Source: Macrostomum hystrix (lineage: Eukaryota; Animalia; Platyhelminthes). Taken from it: 64,000 nt of DNA. The notes below the pieces were generated by a model. The model saw only the letters and a program-made list of their open reading frames with translations, made no database searches and had not been told where the DNA came from. The position numbers and the translations under genes were made by a program. The stretch is from assembly GCA_950097015.1 (NCBI GenBank), contig CATNEN010000039.1, positions 6,944,001 through 7,008,000 on the forward strand. The letters run 5' to 3'. Of this stretch, positions 19,902 through 42,366 are shown in pieces. Each line of letters opens with the position of its first letter. Position 1 is the first letter of the stretch.

Positions 19902-20174
19902 AATCCAATTTTTCATTATAGAAGCATTGGTGAAACATATGAACAGCCTATTGATTGATTTGACTTGTTAATATAAGGCATAAACAGTCTCTATAATTGT
20001 GACACGCCGTGTTGTACGATTTGTATATTTTCTGTTTTTTCTGTTACTACTACTGTTATTACTACTGTTCAGCTTTTAGTAGTAAAGACAGTTTCCTCAA
20101 TTTTACAGTTTTTCTCAGTTTTACATTTTTCATCAATTTATAGCTGAACAATTTGTATAGTTCTGAACGAATTA

Positions 20175-23100
20175 ATGGTAATTTTCCTCTGACTCTGACA
20201 ATGTTCTATTAGTCCTAGTCTACCATTTTAAGAAGTTTTTTTCATAGCCCACTGTTTTGAAAACCCTTTCCCATGATTAAATATAGAAATTTGCCGATTC
20301 TGGAAAACATTTTCAAGCTTTATAGTCAAAAGTGCATTATATTTTGGCTATTTGCCCTACACTTGTTATTTTAAGCCTGTGTTTGGCTGGTCAATTATGG
20401 CCTTGAAAGCATCGTTATATATAAAAAAATGCTGCCGTATTCTCATATAATCGGCATCGATGCACTATCTTTGTTTATTTACTCTCAGAAAATATTGCTT
20501 ATAGAATTAATTTGCCGCTAAGATCCTCAGAACTGACACCCAACCACACCAGATCCTCAAAACTGACACCCAACCACACCAGATCCTCAAAACTGACACC
20601 CAACCACACCAGATCCTAAAAACTGACACCCAACCACACCAGATCCTCAAAACTGACACCCAACCACAGCAGATCCTCAAAACTGACACCCAACCACACC
20701 AGATCCTCAAAACTGACACCCAACCACAGCAGATCCTCAAAACTGACACCCAACCACACCAGATCCTCAAAACTGACACCCAAACACCAGATCCTCAAAA
20801 CTGACACCCAACCACACCAGATCCTCAAAACTGACACCCAACCACACCAGATCCTCAAAACTGACACCCAACCACACCAGATCCTAAAAACTGACACCCA
20901 ACCACAGTAGATCCTTAAAACTGACACCCAACCACACCAGATCCTCAAAACTGACACCCAACCACACCAGATCCTCAAAACTGACACCCAACCACAGTAG
21001 ATCCTTAAAACTGACACCCAACCACACCAGATCCTCAAAACTGACACCCAACCACAGCAGATCCTTAAAACAGACACCCAACCACAGCAGATCCTTAGAA
21101 CTGACACCCAACCACACCAGATCCTCAAAACTGACACCCAACCACAGTAGATCCTTAAAACTGACACCCAACCACACCAGATTTTCAAAACTGACACCCA
21201 ACCACACCAGATCCTCAAAACTGTCACCCAACCGCGGTAGATCCTTAAAACTGACACCCAACCACACCAGATTCTCAAAACTGACACCCAACAACACCAG
21301 ATCCTCAAAATTGACACCCAACCACACCAGATCCTCAAAACTGACACCCAACCACACCAGATCCTTAAAACTGACACCCAACCACAGTAGATCCTTAAAA
21401 CTGACACCCAACCACAGCAGATCCTTAAAACTGACACCCAACCACAGCAGATCCTTAAAACTGACACCCAACCACACCAGATCCTTAAAACAGACACCCA
21501 ACCACAGCAGATCCTTAAAACAGACACCCAACCACAGCAGATCCTTAAAACAGACACCCAACCACAGCAGATTCTCAGAACTGACACCCTACCACACCAG
21601 ATCCTCAAAACTGACACCCTACCACACCAGATCCTCAGAACTGACACCCAACCACACCAGATCCTCAAAACTGACACCCAACCACACCAGATCCTCAGAA
21701 CTGACACCCAACCACAGCAGATCCTCAGAACTGACACCCAACCACACCAGATCCTCAAAACTGACACCTAACCACACCAGATCCTCAGAACTGACACCCA
21801 ACCACACCAGATCCTCAGAACTGACACCCAACCACACCAGATCCTCAAAACTGACACCCTACCACACCAGATCCTCAAAACTGACACCCAACCACACCAG
21901 ATCCTCAAAACTGACACCCTACCACACCAGATCCTCAAAACTGACACCTAACCACACCAGATCCTCAAAACTGACACCCTACCACACCAGATCCTCAAAA
22001 CTGACACCCAACCACACCAGATCCTCAAAACTGACGCCCTACCACACCAGATCCTCAAAACTGACGCCCTACCACACCAGATCCTCAAAACTGACACCCA
22101 ACCACACCAGATCCTCAGAACTGACACCTAACCACACCAGATCCTCAAAACTGACACTTAATCACACCAGATCCTCAGAACTGACACCTAACCACACCAG
22201 ATCCTCAAAACTGACACCCAACCACACCAGATCCTCAGAACTGACACCTAACCACACCAGATCCTCAAAACTGACACCCTACCACACCAGATCCTCAGAA
22301 ATGACACCTAACCACACCAGATCCTCAAAACTGACACCCAACCACACCAGATCCTCAAAACTGACACTTAATCACACCAGATCCTCAAAACTGACACCCG
22401 ATTATTTTTGCACACCACATTTAAAACACTGAATGTGCTTCTGTTTTCAGGCCTATATTACTTCAATCCTGACGGGTCTCCCGTCATTTTCTGCTGATAA
22501 CTTTTCCTGCTACAAGAAAACCGATCGGGTTAGTAAAGCAACTACTGGCAAACTTCTGCATTTGTTGTTAGAGCTTATGTATTTTAAACTCAACTTTTTT
22601 TCAGTCGGCCTGCACACTACAGCTGTTTTCTAATGATGTTCAACCGGCCAGACGTATGCTTTTTAACTTGCTGCTTCTAATTTCGAAAAGTTGTTAATAA
22701 TTCTTTTAAAATGTGATTTATAACACATGCCTCTTTTCAGCTTTCGAAAACGGGCATCAACACAGAAATATTGCAATTATTGCAGCTGCTGACAAGTGGA
22801 ATAAGCGAGTGAGTAAATTTGTTTATGTTCGAACTATCTTAGCCAGCATTTACCAATCCTGTTCCACCTTGACCCATCCTGTTCCACCTTGACCCATCCT
22901 GTTCCACCTTGACCCATCCTGTTCCACCTTGACCCATCCTGTTCCACCTTGACCCATCCTGTTCCACCTTGACCCGTCCAATTCTACCGTGACCCATCCT
23001 GTTCTACCTTGGCCCATCCTGTTCCTCCTCGACCCATTCTGTTCCACATTGACCCATTCTGTTCCACCTTGACACATTCTGCTCCATCTTGACACATTCT

Positions 23101-23615
23101 GCTCCATCTTGACCCATCCTGCTCCACCTTGACACATTCTGCTCCACCTTGACACATTCTGCTCCATCTTGACCCATCCTTTTCCACCTTTACACATCCT
23201 GTTCCACCTTGACACATCCTGTTCCATCTTGACACATTCTGCTCCACCTTGACCCATCCTGCTCCACCTTGACGCAAATCAGTGAATGCTTTTCCAGTTT
23301 GACCCATCTGAAAACAAGCCCTCGATCGCTGAGCTTCGTCAGCGCTGGGCTGACACCCTTCGCAGTCCGGATGAGCTTAAGACCGACTCCGACAACGCCG
23401 CCGCCGCAGCCGTCTCCTCCGCTGACGCCGCTGATGCCACTGAGTCGACGCCCCGCCGTTCGCCTAGAAAGCGTCGAGCGCCTACTGATACGCCTTCATC
23501 GCAACAGCATCAGCAGCAGCGGCGGCGGCGCCGGGTGCAGCTCCAGTCGCAGCCTCAGCAGCTGGATCAAAAGCGGCCGTGCTTACGTCATACTCGTCGC
23601 TCTGGCGGCAACTGA
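20175..23615 (+). CDS. DDA1-like protein, divergent paralog 1
   Basis: Inferred exons 20175-20177 (ATG|gt), 22451-22528, 22605-22653, 22741-22808, 23298-23615 give MAYITSILTGLPSFSADNFSCY..., compared with DDA1 MADFLKGLPVYNKSNFSRF. Intron phases are 0,0,1,0. The ATG-only first exon is tentative. Confidence 0.6.
20521..22399. repeat. 30-bp intronic minisatellite (agatcctcaaaactgacacccaaccacacc)
   Basis: About 62 copies; explains the VSVLRIWCGW and TPNHTRSSKL ORFs. Confidence 0.97.
22852..23273. repeat. 20-bp intronic minisatellite (gacccatcctgttccacctt)
   Basis: About 21 copies filling most of intron 22809-23297. Confidence 0.95.
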
Positions 23616-23766
23616 CTGGCTGCTACTTACGACAACGACTCAAGACTTGAAGTCGCTGTGTGATGCCTTACATTGATGGTTCTTGATGCACTTTAAAGGA
23701 ATTCAATTTTCACTATCGTATACTCAATCCACCCGACACTGATCTCGTTGATCCAATGTTTTCAGC

Positions 23767-24708
23767 CTTGACCCAACTAACTTTAATTTGACCCTACCCA
23801 CCTCACCTTGACCCAAACCACCTCCCCTTGACCCTACCCACCTCACCTTGACCCTACTCACCTCACCTTGACCCTACCCACCTCACAATGACCCTACCCA
23901 CCTCACCTTGACCCTACCCACCTCACAATGACCCTACCTACCTCACCTTGACCCTAACCACCTCAGCTTGACCCTACCCATCTCACAATGACCCTACCTA
24001 CCTCACCTTGACCCTACCCACCTCACCTTGACCCTACCCACCTCACAATGACCCTACCTACCTCACCTTGACCCTACCCACCTCACCTTGACCCTACCCA
24101 TCTCACAATGACCCTACCCACCTCACCTTGACCCTACCCACCTCACCTTGACCCTACCCACCTCACAATGACCCTACCCGACTCACCTTTACACTACCCA
24201 CCTCACCTTTACCCTACCCACCTCACCTGGACCCAACCTACTTCAGATAGACCCAACCCAGTTCCCCTTGACCCAGCCAACCTCACCTTGACCCAAACCA
24301 CCTCCCCTTGACCCTACCCACCTCACCTTGACCCTACTCACCTCACCTTGACCCTACCCACCTCACAATGACCCTACCCACCTCACCTTGACCCTACCCA
24401 CCTCACAATGACCCTACCTACCTCACCTTGACCCTACCCACCTCACAATGACCCTACCTACCTCACCTTGACCCTACCCACCTCACCTTGACCCTACCCA
24501 TCTCACAATGACCCTACCCACCTCACCTTGACCCTACCCACCTCACCTTGACCCTACCCACCTCACAATGACCCTACCCGACTCACCTTTACACTACCCA
24601 CCTCACCTTTACCCTACCCACCTCACCTGGACCCAACCTACTTCAGATAGACCCAACCCAGTTTCCCTTGACCCAGCCAACCTCACCTTGACCCAACCCA
24701 CCTCACCC
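23767..24708. repeat. 20-bp minisatellite (accctacccacctcaccttg) with a higher-order duplication
   Basis: About 47 copies; the rare variant acccaacctacttcagatag occurs at 24231 and 24631. Confidence 0.95.
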
Positions 24709-25354
24709 GGATGTATCCTCCTGTTGCTATTAGACTTTATAATATTAGAATCGGAAGGCTATTAGCTTCCTAGTTGTCATTAAAGTTCTTGTGTGGGCCT
24801 GTATTCAACTTCCAGGTAGATAGTTTCGAGACTTGTTAATATTATTTGCCTGGATAATTTAACAGTTTTGTTTGTGTGATAGTTCTGAACTGAAACTTGC
24901 AAATCTGTTACATTTAATGTTCCTCTTCAGTTTCATGTATTCTTGGAAAGTTGATATATTTTCTAAAACTTATTTACGCGTGTTGCAACTAAAGCCATCG
25001 TAAGATCTGTTAATAGTGTATTTTTACTGACCCTTATTTGAATGTCTATACATAGCATATCGTTCTTAACGTTTGAGTCATGGTTTACCTAACACAAAAT
25101 TTAAACAAAAAAAGGATACAATTAAATTTTAGTTGCTAAAAGTTTGCTTTGTACTGTACATGGTGCTGTACATTGCTTTTATTGTGTGATCACAATTGAC
25201 TGTGTTTGTTTTTACTTTTTTACGAGACTAAGACAATAGACATGACGAACATTTGTATTTCTAGTCCAGTTGGGTCAGATATACACCTAGTGGCACAGTC
25301 GCACCTATTGCTCTTTCAAAGGCTGTGTACAGCCGTTCAGTCCGTGGACAGGGA

Positions 25355-25500
25355 AGACCACCCCACCCAATTTACAGCTGTAGTAAATTAAAGCACTGGG
25401 GAATTAGGTGTCTTGCAAAAAAACACAAACCGTGTTTACCTTGGGGTTCGAACTCCCGACCTTAAGGTTAGAATTCCGAAGCTAAATGAGCGTGCAGTAA
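25355..25500 (-). mobile_element. Degenerate SINE family A
   Basis: atttacagctg..gtgtcttgcaaaaaaacacaa..gttcgaactcccgacc parallels 60610-60791. Confidence 0.65.
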
Positions 25501-25577
25501 GTTTGCAACAATGTTATTAACCAACCGGTTGCAGCTCGAATCGAATTAGGTCGATCTGATCAGTTTGGCCGTGCCGC

Positions 25578-26444
25578 ATGACTAGCCACAACCTGCCTAG
25601 CCAGCAGCGCAGCTCCACCTGCTCGCGCATGCTCAATGACCTGCCCTCCTACTGCAGCGCCAGCTTCACCAAGTACTCGCCGCAGAGCCGGCTGCTCTCT
25701 GTGCGTGCCTTACCCGCTGGACTCAGTGCAATTCTCTTTTCTATGCTCCCTAGAAGACACAAATTGCTTCCCTTGGGCTGAAATTCGAACTCCAGACCTT
25801 TTTTCATAAGTCCAAAGCTCTCACCAGCTTCACTTATGCAATCTACTCAACAAATTTCAACTCACTAAAAACATTTCTATTGAATTTGCAAATCATTTTC
25901 TAGTTAATACATGTACTTGTTATTCTCATTTCAGACTAGAAAAATCCAGGTCTACATCTCCACATCTCCGGAGCGAAATGTGATTCGTAAGTTTTCTTGT
26001 CTTAAAAAATGAAATTAGCGGAATTTAAAGAAAGTAACGAATTTTAACAATTCCGTTGGTATCTGCAGCTATTGTAAACGACCGCGATGGCCTTCTAGTT
26101 CACTTCCTGGCTGCAGATTGTCATCGGCAGGTAGAATACAAGTTTCATTTCTAATACAACAGCCAGCTCGTAGACTAGCCATTTGTTTAAAGTTGCGCTA
26201 TTTTCCTTTCATTTCTCGTCAGCAAAACGGAGGCGCCGCACACAGCAGCTCAGCGCAGCCAAGGCCCGCATCACCAGCTGAAGCGGCTGAGGGCTTCGAT
26301 AACGCCGCTTCAAGCAGTGCTACGCCAGATTCTGATGGACCCACTCAGTGCAAGGTGCCACGACTGGACGAGCAGCTCGCTGACCAACAACAGCCCAGCC
26401 AAACTGACGCAGCTTCCTCAGATTCTTCATCTACTTTAATGTGA
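25578..26444 (+). CDS. DDA1: DDA1 (DET1- and DDB1-associated protein 1)-like, paralog 2
   Basis: Exons 25578-25700, 25935-25986 (52 nt), 26069-26130 (62 nt), 26223-26444 give ...MLNDLPSYCSASFTKY..RKIQVYISTSPERNVIPIVNDRDGLLVHFL..CKVPRLD. This aligns with DDA1 FLKGLPVYNKSNFSRF..RRPSVYLPT..IIVTEKTNILLRYL..RKVARTD. Confidence 0.75.
25745..25832 (-). mobile_element. SINE family A fragment (intronic)
   Basis: agacacaaattg..attcgaactccagacc..agtccaaagctctcacc resembles the tRNA head of the 60.7-kb copy. Confidence 0.5.
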
Positions 26445-30162: not shown

Positions 30163-31903
30163 TGTACACTTAGGGCAGCGGCTGTCTGGCATTGATGTAC
30201 ATTTAGGGCAGAGAGAACTGGCTGGCATTAATGTACATTTAGGGCAGAGAGAACTGGCTGGCATTAATGTACATTTAGGGCAGAGAGAACTGGCTGGCAT
30301 TAATGTACATTTAGGGCAGAGAGAACTGGCTGGCATTAATGTACATTTAGGGCAGAGAGAACTGGCTGGCATTAATGTACATTTAGGGCAGAGAGAACTG
30401 GCTGGCATCAATGTACATTTAGGGCAGAGAGAACTGGCTGGCATTAATGTACATTTAGGGCAGAGAGAACTGGCTGGCATTAATGTACGAGGGGTGTCCA
30501 AAAAGTAGTGGGAATTTTCAACGTAGCTCATAATCGGATTCAGGCACATTAAATTCCTTTACGTTTTTGAAAGCGGATTTATGTATCTCTGTTACTTTTT
30601 TTAATTTTGCATTTATCTTCTGGCATTAAAAAGTTATTAACAATTTAGTGCAGTTCCCCAGGGTACAACTTACAGAACCTTTAACAAGTAGTCATTACGA
30701 CGAAACATGACAACAAACTATCAATCGTAATCCCATTGAAGTTCATCTTAACGTCAACTCAAATGTCCTTTTCATCAGGGATGGAGACCTTCTCCACGTA
30801 GTCGCCTTTGCAGCTGATGCACTTCTCCCAGCGAGTACGCAACGAATCAATTGCATGAGCGTATTGCTCCTTGGGAATCGCAAAAACAAGGATGCGCCGA
30901 ACCTCTTCTTCAAGGCAGTGACGATTCGCGTAGACTTTGCCTCGAAGCAGCTCCTTCAGTCTCGGAAAAAGACAAGTCTGCTGGCGCCAAGTCAGGGGAG
31001 TAGGGTGGGTGAGGCAAGAATTCAAACTTCATGCCCTGAATTGCCTCCACTGTCTTTGAAGCCGTGTGCGGTCGGGCATTGTCGTGGTGGAGAACTGAGG
31101 GCTTGATTCCAGTGCGCCGTTTATTGTGGATGTCAGCCTTGAGCTTCATCAGAGACAAGATGTAGCGCCCCGCATTGACAGTTGTGTTTGGCTCTAGGAA
31201 ATCGATTGTCAAGGGGCCGTGACAATCGAAAAAAAGCAGCAGCATCAGCGGATGTCTGACATGTTTGCACAATCTTCGGATGCTTCAAATGCGCAAGTTG
31301 ACAAATGCTTGGCTGAGCTGGCTTGCATCTAAAGCCTGAGATTGCCTGGCTTTGGTGATGCTTGCATGAGCATAGTTCTCATGTTGAGCCCATAGACATG
31401 CTCAAGCATTTCTGTAGGCATCATCCCGTAAACTTAATGCAGAAAAAGTACAAAGCAAAACTTTCTTCATTGAAAGCCTTCAAAATGTCATCTTCTGTAA
31501 GTCGTAACCTGGAGTCGTACTAAATGGCTCATAACTTTTGAATCCCGGAAGATATTTGCAAAAAAATTTTGCATATATCGATAAATCCTCTTTCAAGAAA
31601 AGTTAACGAGATTAATGTATCTGAATCCAACTATGAGCTACGTTGAAAATTCCCACTACTTTTTGGACACCCCTCGTAAATTTAGGACAGAGAGAACTGG
31701 CTGGCATGGATGTACATTTAGGGCTGATAGAACTGTCTCGCATTGATGTACATTTAGGGCAGAGAGAACTGGCTGGCATTGATGTACATTTAGGGCAGAG
31801 AGAACTGGCTGGCATTGATGTACATTTAGGGCAGAGAGAACTGGCTGGCATTGATGTACATTTAGGGCAGAGAGAACTGGCTGGCATTGATGTACATTTA
31901 GGG
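30163..31903. repeat. 36-bp minisatellite (gtacatttagggcagagagaactggctggcatt[a/g]at) interrupted by a mariner
   Basis: About 9 copies at 30163-30487 and about 6 at 31677-31903. Confidence 0.95.
30488..31676 (-). mobile_element. Defective mariner (DD34D) transposon
   Basis: TA-CGAGGGGTGTCCAAAAAGTAGTGGGAATTTTCAACGTAGCTCATA... perfect TIR, extending imperfectly to ~150 bp; TA TSD. Transposase remnant 31272-30759 has HDNARPH...HPPYSPDLAPAD (34-aa D-D spacing), then a frameshift to LFPRLKE..RWEKCI..GDYVEK. The N-terminus and first Asp region are deleted. Confidence 0.95.
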
Positions 31904-32373: not shown

Positions 32374-34943
32374 AAAATGCAATCGGGTGGGGTGAGATGC
32401 AGTTAAATGCAATCCGGTGGTGTGAGATGCAGTTAAATGCAATCGGGTGGTTTGAGATGCAGTTTAATGCAATCGGGTGGTTTGAGATGCAGTTAAGTGC
32501 AATCGGGTGGTGTGAGATGCAGTTAAATGCAATCGGGTGGTGTGAGATGCAGTTAAATGCAATCCGGTGGTGTGAGATGCAGTTAAATGCAATCGGGTGG
32601 TGTGAGATGCAGTTAAATGCAATCGGGTGGTGTGAGGTGCAGTTAAGTGCAATCGGGTGGTGTGAGATGCAGTTAAATGCAATCCGGTGGTGTGAGATGC
32701 AGTTAAATGCAATCGGGTGGTGTGAGGTGCAGTTAAGTGCAATCGGGTGGTGTGAGATGCAGTTAAATGCAATCCGGTGGTGTGAGATGCAGTTAAATGC
32801 AATCGGGTGGTGTGAGGTGCAGTTAAGTGCAATCGGGTGGTGTGAGATGCAGTTAAATGCAATCGGGTGGTGTGAGATGCAGTTAAATGCAATCGGGTGG
32901 TGTGAGATGCAGTTAAATGCAATCCGGTGGTGTGAGATGCAGTTAAATGCAATCCGGTGGTGTGAGATGCAGTTAAATGCAATCCGGTGGTGTGAGATGC
33001 AGTTAAATGCAATCGGGTGGTGTGAGGTGCAGTTAAGTGCAATCGGGTGGTGTGAGATGCAGTTAAATGCAATCGGGTGGTGTGAGATGCAGTTAAATGC
33101 AATCGGGTGGTGTGAGATGCAGTTAAATGCAATCGGGTGGTGTGAGATGCAGTTAAATGCAATCGGGTGGTGTGAGATGCAGTTAAATGCAATCCGGTGG
33201 TGTGAGATGCAGTTAAATGCAATCGGGTGGTGTGAGGTGCAGTTAAGTGCAATCGGGTGGTGTGAGATGCAGTTAAATGCAATCGGGTGGTGTGAGATGC
33301 AGTTAAATGCAATCGGGTGGTGTGAGATGCAGTTAAATGCAATCGGGTGGTGTGAGATGCAGTTAAATGCAATCGGGTGGTGTGAGATGCAGTTAAATGC
33401 AATCGGGTGGTGTGAGGTGCAGTTAAGTGCAATCGGGTGGTGTGAGATGCAGTTAAATGCAATCCGGTGGTGTGAGATGCAGTTAAATGCAATCGGGTGG
33501 TGTGAGGTGCAGTTAAGTGCAATCGGGTGGTGTGAGATGCAGTTAAATGCAATCGGGTGGTGTGAGGTGCAGTTAAGTGCAATCGGGTGGTGTGAGATGC
33601 AGTTAAATGCAATCGGGTGGTGTGAGATGCAGTTAAATGCAATCGGGTGGTGTGAGATGCAGTTAAATGCAATCGGGTGGTGTGAGATGCAGTTAAATGC
33701 AATCGGGTGGTGTGAGATGCAGTTAAATGCAATCGGGTGGTGTGAGATGCAGTTAAATGCAATCGGGTGGTGTGAGATGCAGTTAAATGCAATCCGGTGG
33801 TGTGAGATGCAGTTAAATGCAATCGGGTGGTGTGAGGTGCAGTTAAGTGCAATCGGGTGGTGTGAGATGCAGTTAAATGCAATCCGGTGGTGTGGGATGC
33901 AGTTAAATGCAATCCGGTGGTGTGAGGTGCAGTTAAGTGCAATCGGGTGGTGTGAGATGCAGTTAAATGCAATCGGGTGGTGTGAGATGCAGTTAAATGC
34001 AATCGGGTGGTGTGAGATGCAGTTAAATGCAATCGGGTGGTGTGAGATGCAGTTAAATGCAATCGGGTGGTGTGAGATGCAGTTAAATGCAATCCGGTGG
34101 TGTGAGATGCAGTTAAATGCAATCGGGTGGTGTGAGGTGCAGTTAAGTGCAATCGGGTGGTGTGAGATGCAGTTAAATGCAATCGGGTGTTGTGAGATGC
34201 AGTTAAATGCAATCGGGTGGTGTGAGATGCAGTTAAATGCAATCGGGTGGTGTGAGATGCAGTTAAATGCAATCGGGTGGTGTGAGATGCAGTTAAATGC
34301 AATCCGGTGGTGTGAGATGCAGTTAAATGCAATCGGGTGGTGTGAGGTGCAGTTAAGTGCAATCGGGTGGTGTGAGATGCAGTTAAATGCAATCGGGTGG
34401 TGTGAGATGCAGTTAAATGCAATCGGGTGGTGTGAGATGCAGTTAAATGCAATCCGGTGGTGTGAGATGCAGTTAAATGCAATCCGGTGGTGTGAGATGC
34501 AGTTAAATGCAATCCGGTGGTGTGAGATGCAGTTAAATGCAATCGGGTGGTGTGAGGTGCAGTTAAGTGCAATCGGGTGGTGTGAGATGCAGTTAAATGC
34601 AATCGGGTGGTGTGAGATGCAGTTAAATGCAATCGGGTGGTGTGAGGTGCAGTTAAATGCAATCGGGTGGTGTGAGATGCAGTTAAATGCAATCGGGTGG
34701 TGTGAGATGCAGTTAAATGCAATCCGGTGGTGTGAGATGCAGTTAAATGCAATCGGGTGGTGTGAGGTGCAGTTAAGTGCAATCGGGTGGTGTGAGATGC
34801 AGTTAAATGCAATCGGGTGGTGTGAGATGCAGTTAAATGCAATCGGGTGGTGTGAGATGCAGTTAAATGCAATCCGGTGGTGTGAGATGCAGTTAAATGC
34901 AATCCGGTGGTGTGAGGTGCAGTTAAATGCAATCCGGTGGTGT
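32374..34943. repeat. 30-bp minisatellite (agttaaatgcaatcgggtggtgtgagatgc)
   Basis: About 85 copies; explains the 849-aa and 846-aa repeat ORFs. Confidence 0.98.
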
Positions 34944-35238: not shown

Positions 35239-35245
35239 TATAAAT
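35239..35245 (+). promoter_or_regulatory. Candidate TATA box of the lectin gene
   Basis: TATAAAT lies about 30 nt before the first ATG (35272) of the ORF. Confidence 0.4.
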
Positions 35246-35346
35246 AGCAGCAGTAGGGCTGGAGCAATAAAATGCTTTCAACCTGTCAATTCCTAGCCAG
35301 TCGTCACAACGGCACACGCAGATTACATCTATATACTCTAAATAAC

Positions 35347-36111
35347 ATGCTATCGGAGGCCACCTTCCTCGTCGCCGTCTGCGTCCTCGGCTATATTGAA
35401 GCGGAGCGGTGCTCCGTCACCGAGTCATTCACGGAGGTGACCGCCAGCTTGTGCATCAGCAGTGAGTTCTCGGAGACGCCCCTCGGCAGCGCTGTGGCAT
35501 CGGAGCTCCAGTGCTCCCTGCTGTGCGCCAGTCGTCGGCGATGCCAGGCATTCAGCATTGCACACGGTCCGTGCGAGCTGTTCGTGTTTGACAGGTGCAG
35601 CAAACACGTGAGAAATTGCAGCTGCTCAGCCACTGGTCGCATCTTTGTGAGGAGACAGTCGGGTCTGCAGCCGGGAAGGCTGTGTCCGTCTGGCTATGAT
35701 GAGCAGCTGTGCGGAGTGAGGTACAAGCTGTACAACAACTCGGGCTACTGGTGGCAGAGCAGGCAGAGGTGCGACAATGAGAGTGGTCTCGTCATCATGG
35801 CCGATGTGGTGGACGCTGCAGAGATGAGCTTCATCAACTCGAAGTTCAGCAGCGTGTACTCGAGCGGCGGCTCCGTGTGGCTCGGAGGCTTGAAGACAGC
35901 GAGCAGTGCCGAGCCAGGCGGAGGCTGGCAGTGGGTGAGCTGCGGCCTGAACGTGAGCGCCGGCCTCTGGGCCGACAAGGAGCCCAACAACAGCGGAGGG
36001 AATGAGAACGTCATTTGCCGCTACAACTTGTACTCGGGTTTGACTGACACCTCGGAGAACTCAGCCATTCCAACCAACACGCTGTGCGAGTGCGTGTCAC
36101 CTTTCTTCTAA
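35347..36111 (+). CDS. Secreted PAN/apple-like + C-type lectin domain protein
   Basis: Signal-peptide-like MLSEATFLVAVCVLGYIEA; PAN-like SELQCSLLC...CQAF...CELF; CTLD with WWQSRQRC, VWLGG, WQW, W..EPNN..NENV, LTD, CEC. An in-frame upstream ATG at 35272 is an alternative start. Confidence 0.85.
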   Translation: MLSEATFLVAVCVLGYIEAERCSVTESFTEVTASLCISSEFSETPLGSAVASELQCSLLCASRRRCQAFSIAHGPCELFVFDRCSKHVRNCSCSATGRIFVRRQSGLQPGRLCPSGYDEQLCGVRYKLYNNSGYWWQSRQRCDNESGLVIMADVVDAAEMSFINSKFSSVYSSGGSVWLGGLKTASSAEPGGGWQWVSCGLNVSAGLWADKEPNNSGGNENVICRYNLYSGLTDTSENSAIPTNTLCECVSPFF

Positions 36112-36534
36112 CCTGACCTACATGTACCAATCTATAAATTTGGTACGATAGCGAAGTGCCATCGATTCGATGCGCAGTCAGTGCCAAGCATTAAAATATT
36201 TATCGATGAATTTTTACTCGTAATTTGAATGTCGATCATTTTAATGGGCCGTCATGGACACCCTGACAGGAAGGTCCATTCGTTGACTTCAAGACTTATG
36301 CGGTGTTTAAAATATTCTGAAATAGCAATGACTAGACTATCCGTTAAAACTTTTTTTACTGATGCAAAAAATCAGTAAAAAATCTGTAAAAAAGCAGTGC
36401 GACTTTTCAGTCCAATGCCCAGTCGAGTGATACGAGCGTAAATTGGCTTCAATTCGACATACAACAGAGCTATATAGGAACAGTTTACAAGTTTGCGAAT
36501 GTAACACACTAAAAGTGAGGAACGAACCTCGCCC

Positions 36535-36583
36535 TGGCTGACCGAGACCGGTTTCTGGCTTGTTTGCCTTCGTCAGTCAGCCA
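36535..36583 (-). ncRNA. Minimal type-I hammerhead ribozyme-like motif (Penelope-type)
   Basis: The minus strand reads UGGCUGA-CUGACGA-AGGC-AAACAA-GCCA-GAAA-CCGG-UC-UCGG-UCAGCCA: CUGANGA/GAAA core, stem I, stem II GGC/GCC, palindromic stem III CCGG and a GUC site. Confidence 0.55.
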
Positions 36584-37304
36584 TAGCCACACGCCGTCCT
36601 CTCCCACCACTCTTAGTGTGCACAGAAGTCTCTTTTAAGCTTGCCATTTTTATGGCGATATTTTTAGTGTTATGTGAGAGTTTTGCAGCCAAGTCTTTGC
36701 TTTTCTACTGTTGTCAGTAGTCTGAATTGTGCGGCTCGTATCTCTCACAGCGAACAAATTCTGTTGGATGTACCAGCTTTTCCGAACTTAATTTTATAAA
36801 AATTAAAAATTTGACAAATCATACATTTCAAGTTACAGTTTAGCGATGGAACACTTTCGAATATACTTTGTACTTTAGGCGAGCAATTCAAAGCCGTATG
36901 GGTACAGGCCCGTTCTATAAAGCTTTCGTAAGTTCCGTCGTACGCTCTAACTTACGCACGAGAACTACTTAAGAACTGTCTGAGAACGTTCTTTCGTGCG
37001 TTCAGAAAAAATTTCGCATATGCGTCGTAACTTACGCAGGGGCTGCGATCAAACTTAAGCACTGGCGTCCTACTTTTACCGTAAGCGGAATTTTTACCGT
37101 CCCTTTTTAGTCCTCTTTGAGACGCATGCTGTACTTATTTAGTAATTCAAGTAACGAATGACACTCACGTTTTCATATCAATAGACAAAAAACATCGAAC
37201 GGCAATATTGTATTGCCCTTGGTTCACACCACCATTATATTTAACTACTGTTGCCACAACAGATTCCAAAACTGACAGGTCATTGATACTCAGAGAAAGA
37301 AGGC

Positions 37305-38060
37305 CTACACGTCATTAAAATGGACCAATTGCCTACTCTCAAAATTCTTTTTTGTCTCCTTGTCGATCGCCAGTCTCTCCTGCTCAATGCGTAGACGCTC
37401 CCTCTTGATCTGCAGCCTCTCTTTCTCGACGAAAAATCGGTCAGTTTCGATCTTCAGTCGGTCTTCCTCCACCCGGAGACGTTTTGTTTCCAAGGATCCA
37501 ATCAGCTCAAGCTTGCTTTGATCTGTCTGACGCTTCTTGTTCTTGGCAGCAGAAGAGGCAGCAGGGGTGGCAGCAGACTCTTCGCTGTCTCCATCGTCGG
37601 CAGTGTCGTACTCAGGCGATGCACATCTGCCAACTTCTTCGACAGATTTACCAGCAGGTGAACTAGCAGCCACCGAGCTTGATGACGCAGCTTGTCCCTT
37701 AGATGCAGGTAACTGCAACGTGTCAACACACACCTTCCACGACCTGGGGTCGGATCGACTGCGCAGCCTTCTCCTCGAAGCTCGACAACTGCGGGGCCTG
37801 CGACGGACCTCCTCCTGTCTTAGCTTGCTCCTTGCGGATGCTGGCGACCTTGTGCTTCAGTTGACTCTTGAAGTCGGACCACCGCTTGCGGCAGTTCTCG
37901 GCTGATCGTCCTTGTCCGCCGACTGAATTCACGATATCGGCAATTTGCTGCCATCCGCGCTTTTTGCGTAAATTTGCTTCTACAGTATTAGCGGAGCTCT
38001 CCAAGTAATTTTTGCGCTTGGTCGTAGCCTCCTGCAGTGTCTCGATTTCAACTGCAGTTG
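37305..38060 (-). pseudogene. Harbinger Myb/SANT-like DNA-binding protein, 5'-truncated and frameshifted
   Basis: KKRGWQQIADIVNSV..RSAENCRKRWSDFKSQLK..KTGGGP (trihelix Myb/NAIF1-type), followed by a coiled-coil tail; frameshift near 37730. Confidence 0.85.
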
Positions 38061-38061
38061 C

Positions 38062-38792
38062 GTGACAGCGTCAGGAGTTGTCACCGACGTTTGCAAGCTG
38101 CTTCAGGACATGGCGCCTGCTCACATTTCGTTTCCAAGCAATCAGCAGGCGGCGGCAGCTTCAGCTCGGGCATTTTTTGACATTGCCGGACTGCCCCAGG
38201 TGCTTGGAGCCATCGACTGCACGCACATCCGCATCCGGCGTCCTATCGACGACGGTGGAGTCTTCATCAATCGGAAAGGATTTCACTCGATCAATGTTTA
38301 GACAGTCTGCACTGCCAATCTCTCATTTACCAACGTTGTCGCACGTTGGTCCGGCAGCAGCCACGACTCCTTCATCGTTCAGCAATCTGCGCTGAAGGAC
38401 CTACTCACTGATGGGATTGTCGCCGGCTTCTTGGTTGCAGATGCGGGCTATCCGCTCCGTCCGTTTCTGATGACGCCGTTCAGGGACCCACAGACGAATT
38501 CCGAGCAAAACTTCAACAGGCGACTGAGCAGAACTCGAGTGACTATCGAAAGGGCATTCGGTGTTCTGAAATCGAGATTTCGAAGTCTCGATCACAGCGG
38601 AGGAGCTCTGCAGTTTCATCGTGGCATGCTGCGTGCTGCACAATTTTGCGATGGCCAGAGCTGTTCCACTTCCGCCTGAAGCTCTGCCGCTGGCCATTGA
38701 AGCAGCAGTTGAAAATCCAGCTGCACCAGCTGAGGACACGGCTGCTGGTCGAGCTGAGAGACAGCGAATAATGCAGCTGCTGCCACCGTGAA
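38062..38792 (+). pseudogene. Harbinger DDE transposase (HARBI1-like), 5'-truncated with stop and frameshifts
   Basis: GAIDCTHI..NRKGFHSINV*..ARWSGSSHDS..VADAGYP..LMTPF..FNRRLSRTRVTIERAFGVLKSRFR..CVLHNF. Confidence 0.9.
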
Positions 38793-40095
38793 ACATTATA
38801 GGAGGATTGCTATTTCCTGCTACTCACTTTTAAAAACAAAACTATGTTGAAACAGTTTCTACAGTCTTTATAAATAATCATTTGTGCTTTTTATATTGGT
38901 GTCTTCACTGCAAAAGTGACTTACGACAGGTCCGACCTGTCTTAGATTTACGACGGTACTTAGGAGGCCGCTGTGACTTTGGAAAGTTTCACCGAACGCA
39001 AATTTACGCACGTGCAGTGACTTAAAATAGCTTCTTAAATCTAAGAACGAGCTTAAGATACGATGGCTTCACCGAACACTTTACGACATTGCGGCAGCGT
39101 AAGTTTGAACTTAAAGATACGCAAGCTTTATAGAACGGCCCTGTGTCTTTAGTCGCATAACGATCTAGAAAAAGATCGAGAGAGAGCTACAGTTGCAATA
39201 AATGGGTTTAATTGACAAGCAGCCAGAATGTCTTAAAATTTCATTTATTTTCTTTTCAAAGTATGAAGTGCGCTCACAAAGAAAGCTAAAGTATGTCTTA
39301 AGTGTCCCATCAGTCATCGAGTCCCAGAATAGCCTAGTCCCAGAAGTGTAACTCCCAGCCAAAATGCATACTCACATTTAATTTCTCTCACCTTCGTGCA
39401 AAATGACACGATTTTGACTGTTTGTCAATCATGCGACGTTTACACATCGTCAGAGGCTGAAATGTTTTGTTTCGAAGTGGCAAAGCTTTTAGAAAAAAAG
39501 CTTCCGCTCCACCGACTGGTGCGCAATTAGGTTCAGCGCCAGCAGGATATGAGCACCGCAGCCGCAGCTCCTCAAGAAGTGATGGGGCCGGAGCATAGTG
39601 TGCTACTCTCAGGGCCGAGAACAGGGCGGCCATTAGCTCTCTGGATGGCAGCCTGACCGGCTAGTGCATGCCATGCAGTGACCTGAAGAGCGCGTCCATG
39701 GCCAGATGTCGCTTTTCGGTCATAGGCACTGCACTGCTTTCATGCCAAAGAAGACGATCGGTCCCACGGCTGCGCGGAAGAACCGCACTTTCTGTTCAGG
39801 TCGTCACTTGCGGATGCGTTGAAGACATTCCTGTGTAAGTTCTCAGCGCCAAAGGCCTGGTTTCTCCTGTGGAAAATTGTAGAGTCTGGACTTAGTACAA
39901 AAGGAGCCCAGGACGGGACACTACGATATTGATAGAAAATATGCAGACCCGACCTGTCAGCCATGAGGAACAGAAGATGCAGCTGGACAGGAGAAAGTAG
40001 CATGAAACAAAAATAGTGCGTTACAGAGACTGGATAATGTGCGAAGGGGTTCCTATTATTTTTTTGGCATTCAGTCCAGCGCAACTCGCTCCAAC

Positions 40096-40841
40096 TCAGT
40101 TAAAAGGCGACACGCATTCGCACAGAGCAACTGTTGGGCTGCCAGAGAGATCTGAGATATCAGCGAGATTCGAAATCGAATGGTAGCGGCAAATGACGTT
40201 CTCATTCCCTCCGCTGTTGTTGGGCTCCTTGTCGGCCCAGAGGCCGGCGCTCACGTTCAGGCCGCAGCTCACCCACTGCCAGCCTCCGCCTGGCTCGGCA
40301 CTGCTCGCTGTCTTCAAGCCTCCGAGCCACACGGAGCCGCCGCTCGAGTACACGCTGCTGAACTGCGAGTTGATGAAGCTCATCTCTGCAGCGTCCACCA
40401 CATCGGCCATGATGACGAGACCACTCTCATTGTCGCACCTCTGCCTGCTCTGCCACCAGTAGCCAGAGTTGTTGTACAGCTTGTACCTCACTCCGCACAG
40501 CTGCTCATCATAGCCAGACGGACACAGCCTTCCCGGCTGCAGACCCGACTGTCTCCTCACAAAGATGCGACCAGTGGCTGAGCAGCTGCAATTTCTCACG
40601 TGTTTGCTGCACCTGTCAAACACGAACAGCTCGCACGGACCGTGTGCAATGCTGAATGCCTGGCATCGCCGACGACTGGCGCACAGCAGGGAGCACTGGA
40701 GCTCCGATGCCACAGCGCTGCCGAGGGGCGTCTCCGAGAACTCACTGCTGATGCACAAGCTGGCGGTCACCTCCGTGAATTACTCGGTGACGGAGCACCG
40801 CTCCGCTTCAATATAGCCGAGGACGCAGACGGCGACGAGGA
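40096..40841 (-). pseudogene. Inverted second copy of the PAN + C-type lectin gene with a premature stop and an alternative C-terminus
   Basis: 40183-40841 is the reverse complement of 35366-36024 with 3 differences seen, one of them TCA>TAA at 40782-40780. The last 28 codons differ but stay in frame. No matching start codon or promoter. Confidence 0.85.
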
Positions 40842-42196
40842 TTGTAACCTGCTGTCTCTTGCCTGTCGCATTCCTTTCTTATTTTGTAAAGCTTCTTTTC
40901 TTGGCAGGTAATATGCTTGTAAGAGCTTTGTCAATCGCTTCCTTTTTTGTCAAAATGGAAAGTTTTATCTGCTTTTCTGGCCCGCCGTGATTGGCTGGAA
41001 TTCTGCCCAAATAATTTTTCTTGCCACGCATTGCCGTTGAAAATATAGGTTCACGTGGATTTAGTTTATGCGTCACCAGCATTCACACAGAACGCAAAAA
41101 GTTCTTTTTTTAGAGCAAGCAAGTTGTTTGGGAAGGTCCAACCTTCCGTAAAATCTGTCCGTGACTCTGTTTGGAGTAGACAAGGAGTATGGTACGAAAT
41201 TTTCTTAGTTGTGCGAACAATGCCCGTGGCCCTGAATTGATGTAATTAATTTTTAATTACCTCGATTAATAAAGACTCGGGGGTAGAAAGCGCTTTCTTT
41301 GTTCTTATTTAGTAGAATTTGGCATGGTGCATTTCTTGGTTTGTGAATTGTGAAACAACATTCTTCTCTCTCGCCGAGTCCAGAGCTCAAAACCTTACGA
41401 ACGAATGATGAGCGAATCAACAACCAACAACCAACATCTATGACCTCATCGACCAGAAAGCAACAACAACAATCAGCACCATTAGCAATCAGTAAAAAAC
41501 TAACAACAAACTAATGAGAAACTAAAAACAGCAAGCAAGGAAGCGAGCAAAAAACAATAACGCATTGCCAACAAGCAATAAGCAGCATCAATTAACATTT
41601 TTAATATTTTCGCCCCTTAGAACTAATTACGCTCTCAGACTTAAAAGCTTACTAGAAAGGTTTGCCCATCATCAGCGATCAAAGTCAAAAATTTATTCAG
41701 TTCTTCTTTATTTTTTTTGGTTCGTTACATTACTTTGGTGCCTACTTCAAGTAGGTAATAAAGCAAAGCCTTCGTAGATGAGTGCATGTGCAATTTCGCT
41801 ACCCAACATTATATTGAGTTAATGATTTTAGTACCTCAAATAGCAGGTGCAGCTGCAGTGACCGCTCCTAAAAATGCCGCCGGCTGCAAGACTGCGCAGT
41901 TCCTTGCCAGCGGTGAGGTGGCGCACGGCGGCAGCCAAGCTGCTGAAAGGTGCAAATAAGTGCAGGCCCGTTAAGCGCACTAGTTCGCAGCCCAACCGGA
42001 ACTGCGCAGCTTCGTAGAGCACGTTGCGGCCAGCCTAATCTACCGCATGTCGCTTTCTCGGGCAGTGCATAGTTTCAAGTCTGAATTAATTTTGCCACCT
42101 CTGCTAATGCACACGTCGGTTTCCGGTACGACTGAGAGGCTTGGCTTGAAGACGGATGGCGATCTTTATTGCCTCTACAAGGGTCATTGTGGTCGC

Positions 42197-42366
42197 CTTC
42201 ATCACACCCTTCATCACACATGTAACAGCATTCATCACACATGTAACAGCATTCATCACACATGTAACAACATTCATCACACATGTAACAGCATTCATCA
42301 CACATGTAACAGCATTCATCACACATGTAACAGCATTCATCACACATGTAACAGCATTCATCACAG
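42197..42366. repeat. 21-bp minisatellite (attcatcacacatgtaacagc)
   Basis: About 7-8 copies. Confidence 0.95.

What the first reader, a model, noticed from the sequence alone, without database searches (positions are those of the whole stretch)
35347..40841. Inverted lectin pair with an identical body and alternative ligand-site tips: a possible shufflon-like or gene-conversion cassette
Seen: 35366-36024 and 40841-40183 form a ~659-bp inverted repeat with only 3 differences found (a TCA>TAA stop, one synonymous change, one K>Q). Identity ends abruptly after the ...ICRY codon. The last 28 codons are long diverged (NLYSGLTDTSENSAIPTNTLCECVSPFF vs HSISNLADISDLSGSPTVALCECVSPFN) with no indels, many synonymous changes, and conserved L-x-D and CECVSPF. 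Known: this segment covers the beta3-beta4/WND-equivalent part of the C-type lectin sugar/Ca2+ site, and the C-terminal part of the same fold is what bacterial DGRs diversify. Inference: copy 2 lacks a start and has a stop near its 5' edge, but its tip is intact. One crossover within the inverted block would flip the ~4.2-kb middle and place tip 2 on the promoter-bearing copy, switching specificity. The ordinary alternative is a single recent conversion event between old paralogs.
Basis: partly seen in the sequence, partly recalled or inferred. Interest (0 to 1): 0.82.

Follow-up and report, generated by a model that had tools for sequence, protein, structure and literature searches.

The report
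Gene-converted inverted flatworm lectin pair
Two neighbouring, oppositely oriented copies of a flatworm lectin-like gene share an almost identical 659-base middle because ordinary copy-and-paste repair between duplicated genes (gene conversion) overwrote it; one copy is a long-dead pseudogene, and nothing points to a purpose-built switch.

Summary
Window 35366-36024 and 40841-40183 form a 659-bp inverted repeat with exactly 3 differences. It is followed by 80-nt tips that differ at 29 sites with no indels.

The shufflon-like reading is not supported.
- The genes are intronless PAN + C-type-lectin-fold secreted proteins. They belong to a family of over 100 copies found only in Macrostomum flatworms.
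- Copy 2 lacks an ATG and has a TAA stop. A third, decayed fragment 470 kb away (L003) shares that stop, tip 2 and copy 2's 3' flank, and is 5-6% diverged in body and tip alike. Body + tip 2 + stop is therefore an old linked unit.
- Synonymous divergence between the tips is near saturation (pS 0.60, dN/dS 0.29), so these are old paralogs.
- L003 and outgroup paralogs indicate at least two conversion episodes. The last one probably ran from the expressed copy into the pseudogene.
- Among 38 paralogs, no other of the 104 near-identical blocks ends at this breakpoint.
- The spacer holds only a MITE-like repeat and an internally deleted Harbinger transposon. No recombinase is present.

Family-wide mosaicism had already been noted by this scan on other pieces of the same genome (s1-842808, s1-842830). 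A rare homologous inversion between the arms cannot be excluded without reads.

The parts
35347..36111 (+). Copy 1: intact intronless gene of 254 codons plus stop. It encodes a signal peptide, a PAN/apple-like half and a C-type-lectin-fold half.
   Evidence: ORF and translation. All family-invariant residues are present. The CTLD fold is modelled at pLDDT 91.9. Profile hits to PAN (MIC5, E 1.4e-4) and to CTLDs.
35239..35247 (+). TATAAATAG, a TATA-like motif about 100 nt upstream of copy 1's ATG. Promoter function is inferred only.
   Evidence: Read directly from the sequence. Not tested functionally.
35366..36024 (+). Arm 1 of the inverted repeat: codons 7-226 of copy 1, the conversion tract.
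   Evidence: 3 differences in 659 nt against arm 2.
36025..36108 (+). Tip 1 (28 codons): beta3-beta4 turn, beta4 with L-T-D, and beta5 with LCECVSPF.
   Evidence: 29/80 nt differ from tip 2. Unique in the genome together with its 3' flank. Mapped on the model.
36500..36730 (.). MITE-like repeat of about 231 bp in the spacer.
   Evidence: At least 30 genomic copies at 97-98% identity.
36907..39157 (.). PIF/Harbinger-type transposon copy, internally deleted. It carries a Myb/SANT-like ORF at 37723-38004 (-) and DDE_Tnp_4 fragments at 38062-38301 and 38431-38679 (+).
   Evidence: Pfam hits PF13873 (E 4e-9) and PF13359 (E 5.5e-13). 95-96% identical to five or more other copies, which carry about 800 bp more at window position ~38046.
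40099..40182 (-). Tip 2 (28 codons) of copy 2.
   Evidence: The same tip, with 5/80 differences, occurs in L003.
40183..40841 (-). Arm 2 of the inverted repeat: the body of the copy 2 pseudogene.
40780..40782 (-). Premature TAA stop (codon 27) in copy 2. Copy 2 also has AAG where copy 1 has ATG.
   Evidence: The same TAA is present in L003.

Best explanation
This is a convergent (tail-to-tail) pair of old paralogs from a large, intronless, Macrostomum-specific family of secreted PAN + C-type-lectin-fold proteins. Copy 1 is an intact gene. Copy 2 is a long-standing pseudogene with no ATG and an in-frame TAA.

Their coding bodies (codons 7-226) have been homogenised by interlocus (ectopic) gene conversion acting across the roughly 4-kb spacer, in at least two episodes. 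The most recent episode covered about the last 200 nt of the body and probably copied copy 1 into copy 2. Each tract stopped where the paralogs are too diverged for heteroduplex to extend: the 28-codon tip and the signal-peptide start. That leaves a sharp identity boundary.

Shown: the identity pattern, the pseudogene state and its age, the age of the tips, the family-wide mosaicism, and the fold. Inferred: the mechanism (homologous repair templated by the neighbouring paralog), the number of episodes and their direction.
For: (1) There are 3 differences in 659 nt, against 29 in the next 80 nt, and the flanks are unalignable.

(2) Tip pS is 0.60 (dS about 1.2) and pN is 0.28. The conserved tip codons have pS 0.73 and pN 0.04. 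The tips are therefore ancient and both were once under purifying selection.

(3) L003 (C39:6511892-6512608) is a fragment of copy 2. It shares the TAA stop, the T at 35742, tip 2 and about 47 nt of 3' flank. It is 5.1% diverged in the body and 6.2% in the tip. The body-tip 2-stop linkage therefore predates the 0.5% identity event.

(4) L003-copy 2 divergence is 2.7% over 35415-35824 and 11.5% over 35825-36024 (max-chi-square permutation p = 0.0015). In the 3' part L003 keeps outgroup states where copies 1 and 2 share derived ones. That part of copy 2 was therefore overwritten after L003 split off.

(5) Across 38 paralogs I found 104 blocks of at least ~97% identity. Their ends are scattered between codons 128 and 254 and all include the core (codons ~64-131). 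The core has pS 0.08 against 0.43-0.63 elsewhere. This is pervasive conversion.

(6) Tip 1 plus its flank, and copy 2's upstream flank, are each unique in the genome. No third donor exists.
Against: - Direction and number of events rest on one degraded fragment (L003) and on distant outgroups. L003 could itself have been partly converted.
- The TAA stop sits inside otherwise identical sequence, 60 nt from the 5' boundary. This requires a patchy tract, separate events, or selection against importing the stop into copy 1.
- Conversion between sequences that were once as diverged as the tips is hard to start. It probably needed the family's conserved core as a homology seed.
- No read-level or population data were available. 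A co-existing inversion polymorphism is untested.
Confidence: 0.85

Rival explanations
1. Recombinational switch. Crossover between the 659-bp inverted arms flips the ~4.2-kb middle, recurrently or in a programmed way. This puts tip 2 on the promoter-bearing copy and changes ligand specificity.
For: The geometry allows it. The arms are inverted and 99.5% identical. A crossover anywhere in 35427-36024 would give an open copy-1::tip-2 gene. Tip 2 is still open and keeps L-x-D and LCECVSPF. The tip maps to the beta4/WND part of the lectin fold.
Against: - No site-specific recombinase is present. The only recombinase-like sequence is an internally deleted Harbinger remnant.
- There is one alternative tip only, and it sits on a pseudogene that has carried its stop for at least 5% divergence.
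- L003 shows the same stop-tip 2-flank linkage as today, so there is no trace of a past flip.
- No other paralog pair shares the breakpoint.
- The exchange that did occur moved the conserved body, not the tip, and probably ran from gene to pseudogene.
- A 659-bp homology would give only low spontaneous inversion rates (general knowledge of non-allelic homologous recombination).
Confidence: 0.04
2. Recent inverted duplication of most of the gene, followed by replacement of one tip (and the 5' end) by conversion from a third paralog.
For: It would also give an identical body with a divergent tip. Module swapping of this kind does occur in the family. For example, C3:8234247 combines the N-terminus of C3:8115300 with the CTLD and tip of C3:8117998 / C3:6399844.
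Against: - No donor for tip 1 exists anywhere in the genome.
- The only other tip 2 is L003, a derivative of copy 2.
- L003 shows that body + tip 2 already formed a unit about 5% divergence ago.
- The flanks of both copies are unique and unrelated.
- The spacer holds older transposon insertions that are 4-5% diverged from their relatives.
Confidence: 0.08
3. Assembly or polishing artefact: paralogous reads homogenised the two bodies, or an inverted duplication was created falsely.
For: One published Macrostomum hystrix assembly was polished with long and short reads (PMC10468722). I could not inspect reads.
Against: - The arms keep 3 real differences.
- The repeat is limited to the coding body, with unique flanks and a 4-kb spacer containing transposons. 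It is not a fold-back palindrome.
- The body-tip 2 junction and the TAA stop are independently present in L003, 470 kb away.
- Polishing cannot turn sequence that was 10-30% diverged into 659 identical bases.
Confidence: 0.02

Closest known systems
Interlocus (ectopic) gene conversion between inverted or tandem paralogs, i.e. concerted evolution as seen in palindrome arms and in multigene families of immune or recognition genes
   Same: A tract of near identity is bounded sharply by old, divergent paralogous sequence. Different segments give discordant phylogenies. A pseudogene takes part. Tract ends are scattered across the family.
   Different: Nothing essential. The unusual points are the sharpness of the boundary at a functional loop and the size of this family: over 100 intronless copies, with a ~190-nt core kept 97-100% identical.
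Bacterial shufflon (R64 Rci/sfx, PilV C-terminal switching) and other invertible-DNA switches
   Same: Inverted repeats flank a segment whose inversion would exchange the C-terminal end of a binding protein.
   Different: - This is a eukaryotic genome.
- There is no site-specific recombinase and there are no short crossover sites.
- The repeats are 659 bp of coding homology.
- There is a single alternative tip, and it lies on a dead copy.
Pseudogene-templated diversification cassettes (chicken IgV pseudogenes, Borrelia vlsE, Neisseria pilS, trypanosome VSG)
   Same: A silent, startless copy lies next to an expressed gene and exchanges sequence with it by gene conversion.
   Different: Those systems move the variable segment from many silent donors into one expression site. 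Here the conserved body was exchanged, the variable tip was excluded, there is only one silent copy, and the inferred direction is expressed to silent.
Diversity-generating retroelements acting on C-type-lectin-fold variable proteins (Bordetella phage Mtd)
   Same: Variation is concentrated in the C-terminal part of a C-type lectin fold.
   Different: There is no reverse transcriptase and no template repeat. The tip differences are not adenine-specific. The tips differ through old substitutions that include many synonymous ones.
Invertebrate C-type lectins codakine and CEL-I, the nearest solved structures
   Same: Same fold (TM 0.77-0.79). An EPN motif and the following Glu align.
   Different: - The WND motif is L-T-D or L-A-D.
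- The usual inner disulfide is absent in most family members.
- A C-terminal C-E-C motif is present.
- The domain is fused to an N-terminal PAN-like half.
- Pfam Lectin_C does not reach its threshold.

Membership tests
C-type lectin-like domain (CTLD) superfamily | The CTLD fold: two helices, two sheets and a long loop region | tested here: met
   AF2 model of residues 113-254 has pLDDT 91.9. Foldseek gives probability 1.00 and TM 0.77-0.79 to CEL-I, codakine, CD23, DC-SIGN and langerin.
C-type lectin-like domain (CTLD) superfamily | Sequence match to the family profile (Pfam PF00059 Lectin_C) | tested here: inconclusive
   The single sequence gets no Pfam hit even at E <= 10. The family profile does hit PDB CTLDs at E 5.7e-5 and PF00059-bearing proteins at E 1.9e-7.
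Ca2+-dependent carbohydrate-binding C-type lectins (CRD sensu stricto) | EPN or QPD motif plus the WND motif that supply the Ca2+ site-2 ligands | tested here: not met
   EPN is present (KEPNN, aligned to the EPN of codakine, mosGCTL-1 and L-selectin). WND is replaced by L-T-D in copy 1, L-A-D in copy 2 and L-x-D across the family. Sugar or Ca2+ binding is therefore unproven.
PAN/apple domain | Match to a PAN profile with its conserved cysteine pattern | tested here: inconclusive
   Pfam PAN_4 gives E 0.061, below threshold. The family profile hits the Eimeria MIC5 PAN domain at E 1.4e-4. The full-length model failed (pLDDT 35).
Shufflon / site-specific invertible switch | A dedicated site-specific recombinase encoded nearby | tested here: not met
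   Between and around the arms there is only a Myb-like ORF and DDE_Tnp_4 fragments of an internally deleted Harbinger transposon.
Shufflon / site-specific invertible switch | Short conserved crossover sites shared by several invertible segments, giving a fixed breakpoint | tested here: not met
   The repeat is 659 bp of coding homology. Among 104 high-identity blocks in 38 paralogs, none other ends at codons 222-230.
Shufflon / site-specific invertible switch | Both orientations present in a population of molecules | not testable with these tools
   No reads are available and no alternative haplotig is in the assembly.
Pseudogene-donor gene-conversion cassette system | The variable segment is transferred from silent donors into the expressed gene | tested here: not met
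   The converted tract is the conserved body and the variable tip is excluded. Comparison with L003 and outgroups favours copy 1 to copy 2 for the last tract.
Diversity-generating retroelement target | Reverse transcriptase plus a template repeat, with adenine-specific differences | tested here: not met
   No reverse transcriptase lies near the pair. The tip differences involve all four bases.
Interlocus gene conversion | A near-identical tract bounded by old paralogous divergence, with discordant histories of adjacent segments | tested here: met
   Divergence is 0.5% in the body against 36% in the tip. Tip dS is about 1.2. The L003 comparison shows heterogeneity with p = 0.0015.

The most novel reading that the evidence does not exclude
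The 659-bp inverted arms could act as a homologous-recombination flip-flop. Rare germline or somatic inversions of 36025-40182 would place tip 2 on the expressed copy. Together with the family-wide conserved core, this would form part of a selected recombinational system that shuffles ligand-binding tips of secreted lectin-like proteins in a flatworm.
Probability: 0.04. Interest if true: 0.8.

Novelty: new member of a known kind. Interest (0 to 1): 0.3.

Why it matters
Taken alone, the pair is a clean textbook case of ectopic gene conversion. It has a datable third copy, and it shows how a conversion tract stops at a diverged functional loop and how a dead copy is kept looking 'fresh'.

The wider value lies at family level. 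More than 100 intronless PAN + lectin-fold genes are restricted to Macrostomum. Their ~190-nt core is homogenised even at synonymous sites, while the signal/PAN start and the lectin tip are hypervariable and recombined in different combinations. If that shuffling is selected rather than incidental, it would be an invertebrate germline route to a diverse recognition repertoire. The pair in this window adds no evidence for a dedicated mechanism.

Tried and rejected
- **Full-length structure prediction.** With a 15-sequence alignment it failed (pLDDT 35). Only the CTLD half, with 39 sequences, worked, so the PAN half remains unmodelled.
- **Pfam on the single protein.** It gave nothing for the lectin half.
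- **ESM Atlas look-up.** Unavailable.
- **The look-up of encoding contigs.** Closed. I could not look at the M. lignano homologue's locus or at transcript-derived contigs.
- **Expression evidence.** None was obtainable. Neither copy 1's protein nor a tip-2 protein is in the protein collection.
- **L003 as a processed retrocopy.** L003's homology ends near an A-rich stretch in copy 2's 3' flank. Its flanks are unique and there is no clear poly(A), so this stays open.
- **Copy 2 rescued by trans-splicing.** Macrostomum spliced leaders probably end in ATG (PMC10468722), and ...cag|GTT ACA ATC... would be in frame. The TAA at codon 27 still kills the reading frame.
- **Positive selection on the tips.** dN/dS is 0.29 for the pair. 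pN/pS is about 0.9 for the hypervariable tip codons in 26 closer family pairs. These sites are relaxed or mixed, not demonstrably adaptive.
- **Transposon capture of copy 2.** Rejected. Both flanks of copy 2 are unique, and the transposons lie well inside the spacer.
Full report
**1. Observation**

An ungapped comparison of window 35320-36140 with the reverse complement of the partner arm shows exactly three differences between 35366-36024 and 40841-40183:
- 35426 C/A, which turns TCA into a TAA stop in copy 2;
- 35742 G/T, synonymous;
- 35842 A/C, K>Q.

The repeat finder reports the same pair as 748 nt at 95% identity when the tips are included. After the ...ICRY codon the next 80 nt differ at 29 positions without indels. 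Beyond the stop codons, and upstream of 35366, the two loci cannot be aligned. Copy 1 (35347-36111, +) is an intact 254-codon ORF. Copy 2 (40841-40096, -) has AAG where copy 1 has ATG, and it carries the TAA at codon 27.

**2. What the genes are**

The window is G000:C39:6944001-7008000 of a 220-Mb, 42-contig eukaryotic assembly. It is not human. The only database relatives are Macrostomum lignano proteins at 43-46% identity, which UniRef names 'C-type lectin domain-containing protein', plus a few unnamed transcript-derived sequences. More distant hits carry Pfam PF00059. I did not verify the species independently.

Evidence on the domains:
- Pfam does not recognise the single sequence.
- A profile of 15 family members hits solved C-type lectins (codakine E 5.7e-5, mosGCTL-1, L-selectin) and a PAN domain (Eimeria MIC5, E 1.4e-4).
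- An AlphaFold2 model of residues 113-254, built from a 39-sequence alignment, has pLDDT 91.9.
- That model matches CEL-I, codakine, CD23, DC-SIGN and langerin at TM 0.77-0.79.

In the model, beta3 is V-I-C-R (residues 222-225), beta4 is L-T-D-T (232-235) and beta5 is T-L-C-E-C-V-S (244-250). The identity boundary (codon 226/227) therefore lies just after beta3. WND itself is L-T-D or L-A-D, so Ca2+/sugar binding is unproven.

**3. Spacer**

The 3998 nt between the arms contain two repeats:
- a ~231-bp MITE-like repeat at 36500-36730, with at least 30 genomic copies at 97-98% identity;
- a PIF/Harbinger-type transposon at 36907-39157, with Myb_DNA-bind_5 on the minus strand and DDE_Tnp_4 fragments on the plus strand. 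It is 95-96% identical to five or more other copies, which carry about 800 bp more at window ~38046.

No site-specific recombinase, reverse transcriptase or other candidate machinery is present. Without the two insertions the genes would lie about 1.5 kb apart, tail to tail.

**4. A third copy dates the parts**

The genome holds one more close relative, L003 (C39:6511892-6512608), 470 kb away. It is a 5'-truncated, indel-ridden fragment. It corresponds to copy 2 from 10 nt before the TAA stop to about 40-47 nt past its natural stop, and it lies between unique flanks.

L003 shares with copy 2 the TAA stop, the T at 35742, tip 2 and the start of the 3' flank. Its substitution divergence from copy 2 is 5.1% in the body (29/567) and 6.2% in the tip (5/80). 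The unit 'stop + body + tip 2 + copy-2 flank' therefore existed when L003 was made, long before the event that left copies 1 and 2 only 0.5% apart. Copy 2 has been a pseudogene all that time. The present linkage of tip 2 to the stop-bearing 5' part is the same as it was then, so there is no trace of a fixed flip.

**5. More than one conversion, and its direction**

Divergence between L003 and copy 2 is uneven:

| Segment | Differences | Divergence |
|---|---|---|
| 35415-35824 | 11/410 | 2.7% |
| 35825-36024 | 18/157 | 11.5% |

The max-chi-square permutation test gives p = 0.0015. In the 3' part L003 repeatedly carries the state of the outgroup paralogs (L004, L005, L007, L008), while copies 1 and 2 share a different state. 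The sites are 35893, 35902-35904, 35977-35978 and 36011.

The simplest reading is that L003 preserves an older copy-2 sequence. After L003 split off, the last ~200 nt of copy 2's body were overwritten from copy 1. The alternative is that copy 2 accumulated 11% change there and then exported it. That would need far more change than its neutral tip shows.

The 5' part was already similar earlier, so at least two episodes are needed. All three copy-1/copy-2 differences lie 5' of 35843, which is consistent with the 3' tract being the youngest. These steps are inferences from one degraded fragment and distant outgroups.

**6. Age and selection of the tips**

For the 28 tip codons pS = 0.60 (dS about 1.2), pN = 0.28 and dN/dS = 0.29. 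Split by conservation:

| Tip codons | pS | pN |
|---|---|---|
| Ten conserved codons (L, D, LCECVSPF) | 0.73 | 0.04 |
| Hypervariable codons | 0.60 | 0.42 |

The tips are ancient paralogous sequence that evolved under purifying selection on the scaffold residues. They are not recent hypermutation. In 26 closer family pairs, pN/pS for the hypervariable tip codons is about 0.9. That indicates relaxed or mixed selection, with no demonstrable positive selection. Tip differences involve all four bases, so there is no DGR-like adenine bias.

**7.

The genome has at least 122 candidate copies, mostly on contig C3 between 3.9 and 8.8 Mb. I extracted 41 copies, most of them intact single-exon ORFs of about 250 codons with signal peptides.

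Segment identities show a ~190-nt core (CQAF...GVKYKL) that is 97-100% identical among C3/C38 copies. The N-terminal part is 35-70% identical and the tip 50-70%. Core pS is 0.08 against 0.43-0.63 elsewhere, so this is homogenisation rather than protein-level constraint.

Modules are combined differently in different genes. For example, C3:8234247 has the N-terminus of C3:8115300 (99%) and the CTLD and tip of C3:8117998 / C3:6399844 (96-98%).

A scan of 38 genes (703 pairs) found 104 blocks of at least ~97% identity. All include the core. Their 3' ends fall at codons 128-135, 153-168, 201-209 and 237-254. Only the window pair ends at codons 222-230. There is thus no shared ICRY breakpoint, and the ends behave like conversion-tract ends. 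Other inverted neighbours exist with different patterns. C3:8383999(-)/8388086(+) share codons 67-254, tips included. C1:21893432(+)/21895740(-) share codons 67-170.

The same family-wide mosaicism was reported by this scan on two other pieces of the genome (s1-842808, s1-842830). My measurements on my own sample agree with those notes.

**8. Conclusion on mechanism**

The pair is best explained by repeated ectopic gene conversion between two old, adjacent, convergently oriented paralogs. One of them died long ago. The tract boundaries are set by loss of homology at the diverged tip and at the signal-peptide start.

The rival readings fare as follows:
- **Flip switch.** It is geometrically possible, because a crossover in 35427-36024 would create an open copy-1::tip-2 gene. 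It has no support from machinery, family pattern, history or direction of exchange.
- **Recent duplication with tip replacement.** This is disfavoured because no donor tip exists and because of L003.
- **Assembly artefact.** This is very unlikely. The repeat is confined to the coding body, three differences are retained, the spacer is unique, and the body-tip 2 junction is independently present in L003.

**9. Novelty and score**

The phenomenon is a known kind of event, interlocus gene conversion in a multigene family, occurring in a lineage-specific and little-studied family. The specific pair is ordinary. The family-level pattern is moderately interesting, but the scan had already flagged it elsewhere in this genome. 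Interest 0.3.

Noticed in passing
window 32375-34943: A 30-bp minisatellite (85.6 copies, 96% matches) ends about 400 nt upstream of copy 1's ATG. Two 36-bp arrays sit at 30163-30488 and 31676-31903, and a 21-bp array at 42210-42365.
   Followed up: no
window 36500-36730: A MITE-like element of about 231 bp has at least 30 copies at 97-98% identity spread over many contigs. This suggests recent mobilisation.
   Followed up: partly
window 36907-39157: A Harbinger/PIF-type transposon copy carries a Myb-like ORF and DDE_Tnp_4 fragments. It lacks about 800 bp that the copies on C12, C29, C1 and C30 carry.
   Followed up: partly
L003 (G000:C39:6511892-6512608): A ~736-bp fragment of the copy 2 pseudogene is inserted 470 kb away between unique flanks. 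It is 5'-truncated and ends near an A-rich stretch of copy 2's 3' flank. How it got there is open: retrocopy, repair filler or something else.
   Followed up: partly
L006-L044 (G000 contigs C3, C38, C1, C9): A ~190-nt core of the family is 97-100% identical in nucleotides among copies megabases apart and on different contigs (C3 vs C38), while the rest of the genes is 35-90% identical. Each cluster (C1, C9, C39) appears to have its own homogenised version.
   Followed up: partly
L028 (G000:C3:8383999-8388800): A divergent (head-to-head) inverted pair about 4 kb apart shares codons 67-254 at 98%, tips included, but has different N-termini. It is the mirror image of the window pair.
   Followed up: no
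window 20001-26000: Strong negative GC skew (-0.40 to -0.55) extends over about 6 kb. The cause was not examined.
   Followed up: no
window 40842-40870: Just upstream of arm 2 the sequence reads ...gacagcag|GTT ACA ATC CTC.... An AG acceptor there would be in frame with an ATG-terminated spliced leader, which Macrostomum is reported to have (PMC10468722). Copy 2's missing ATG alone therefore need not be disabling, but the TAA at codon 27 is.
   Followed up: no
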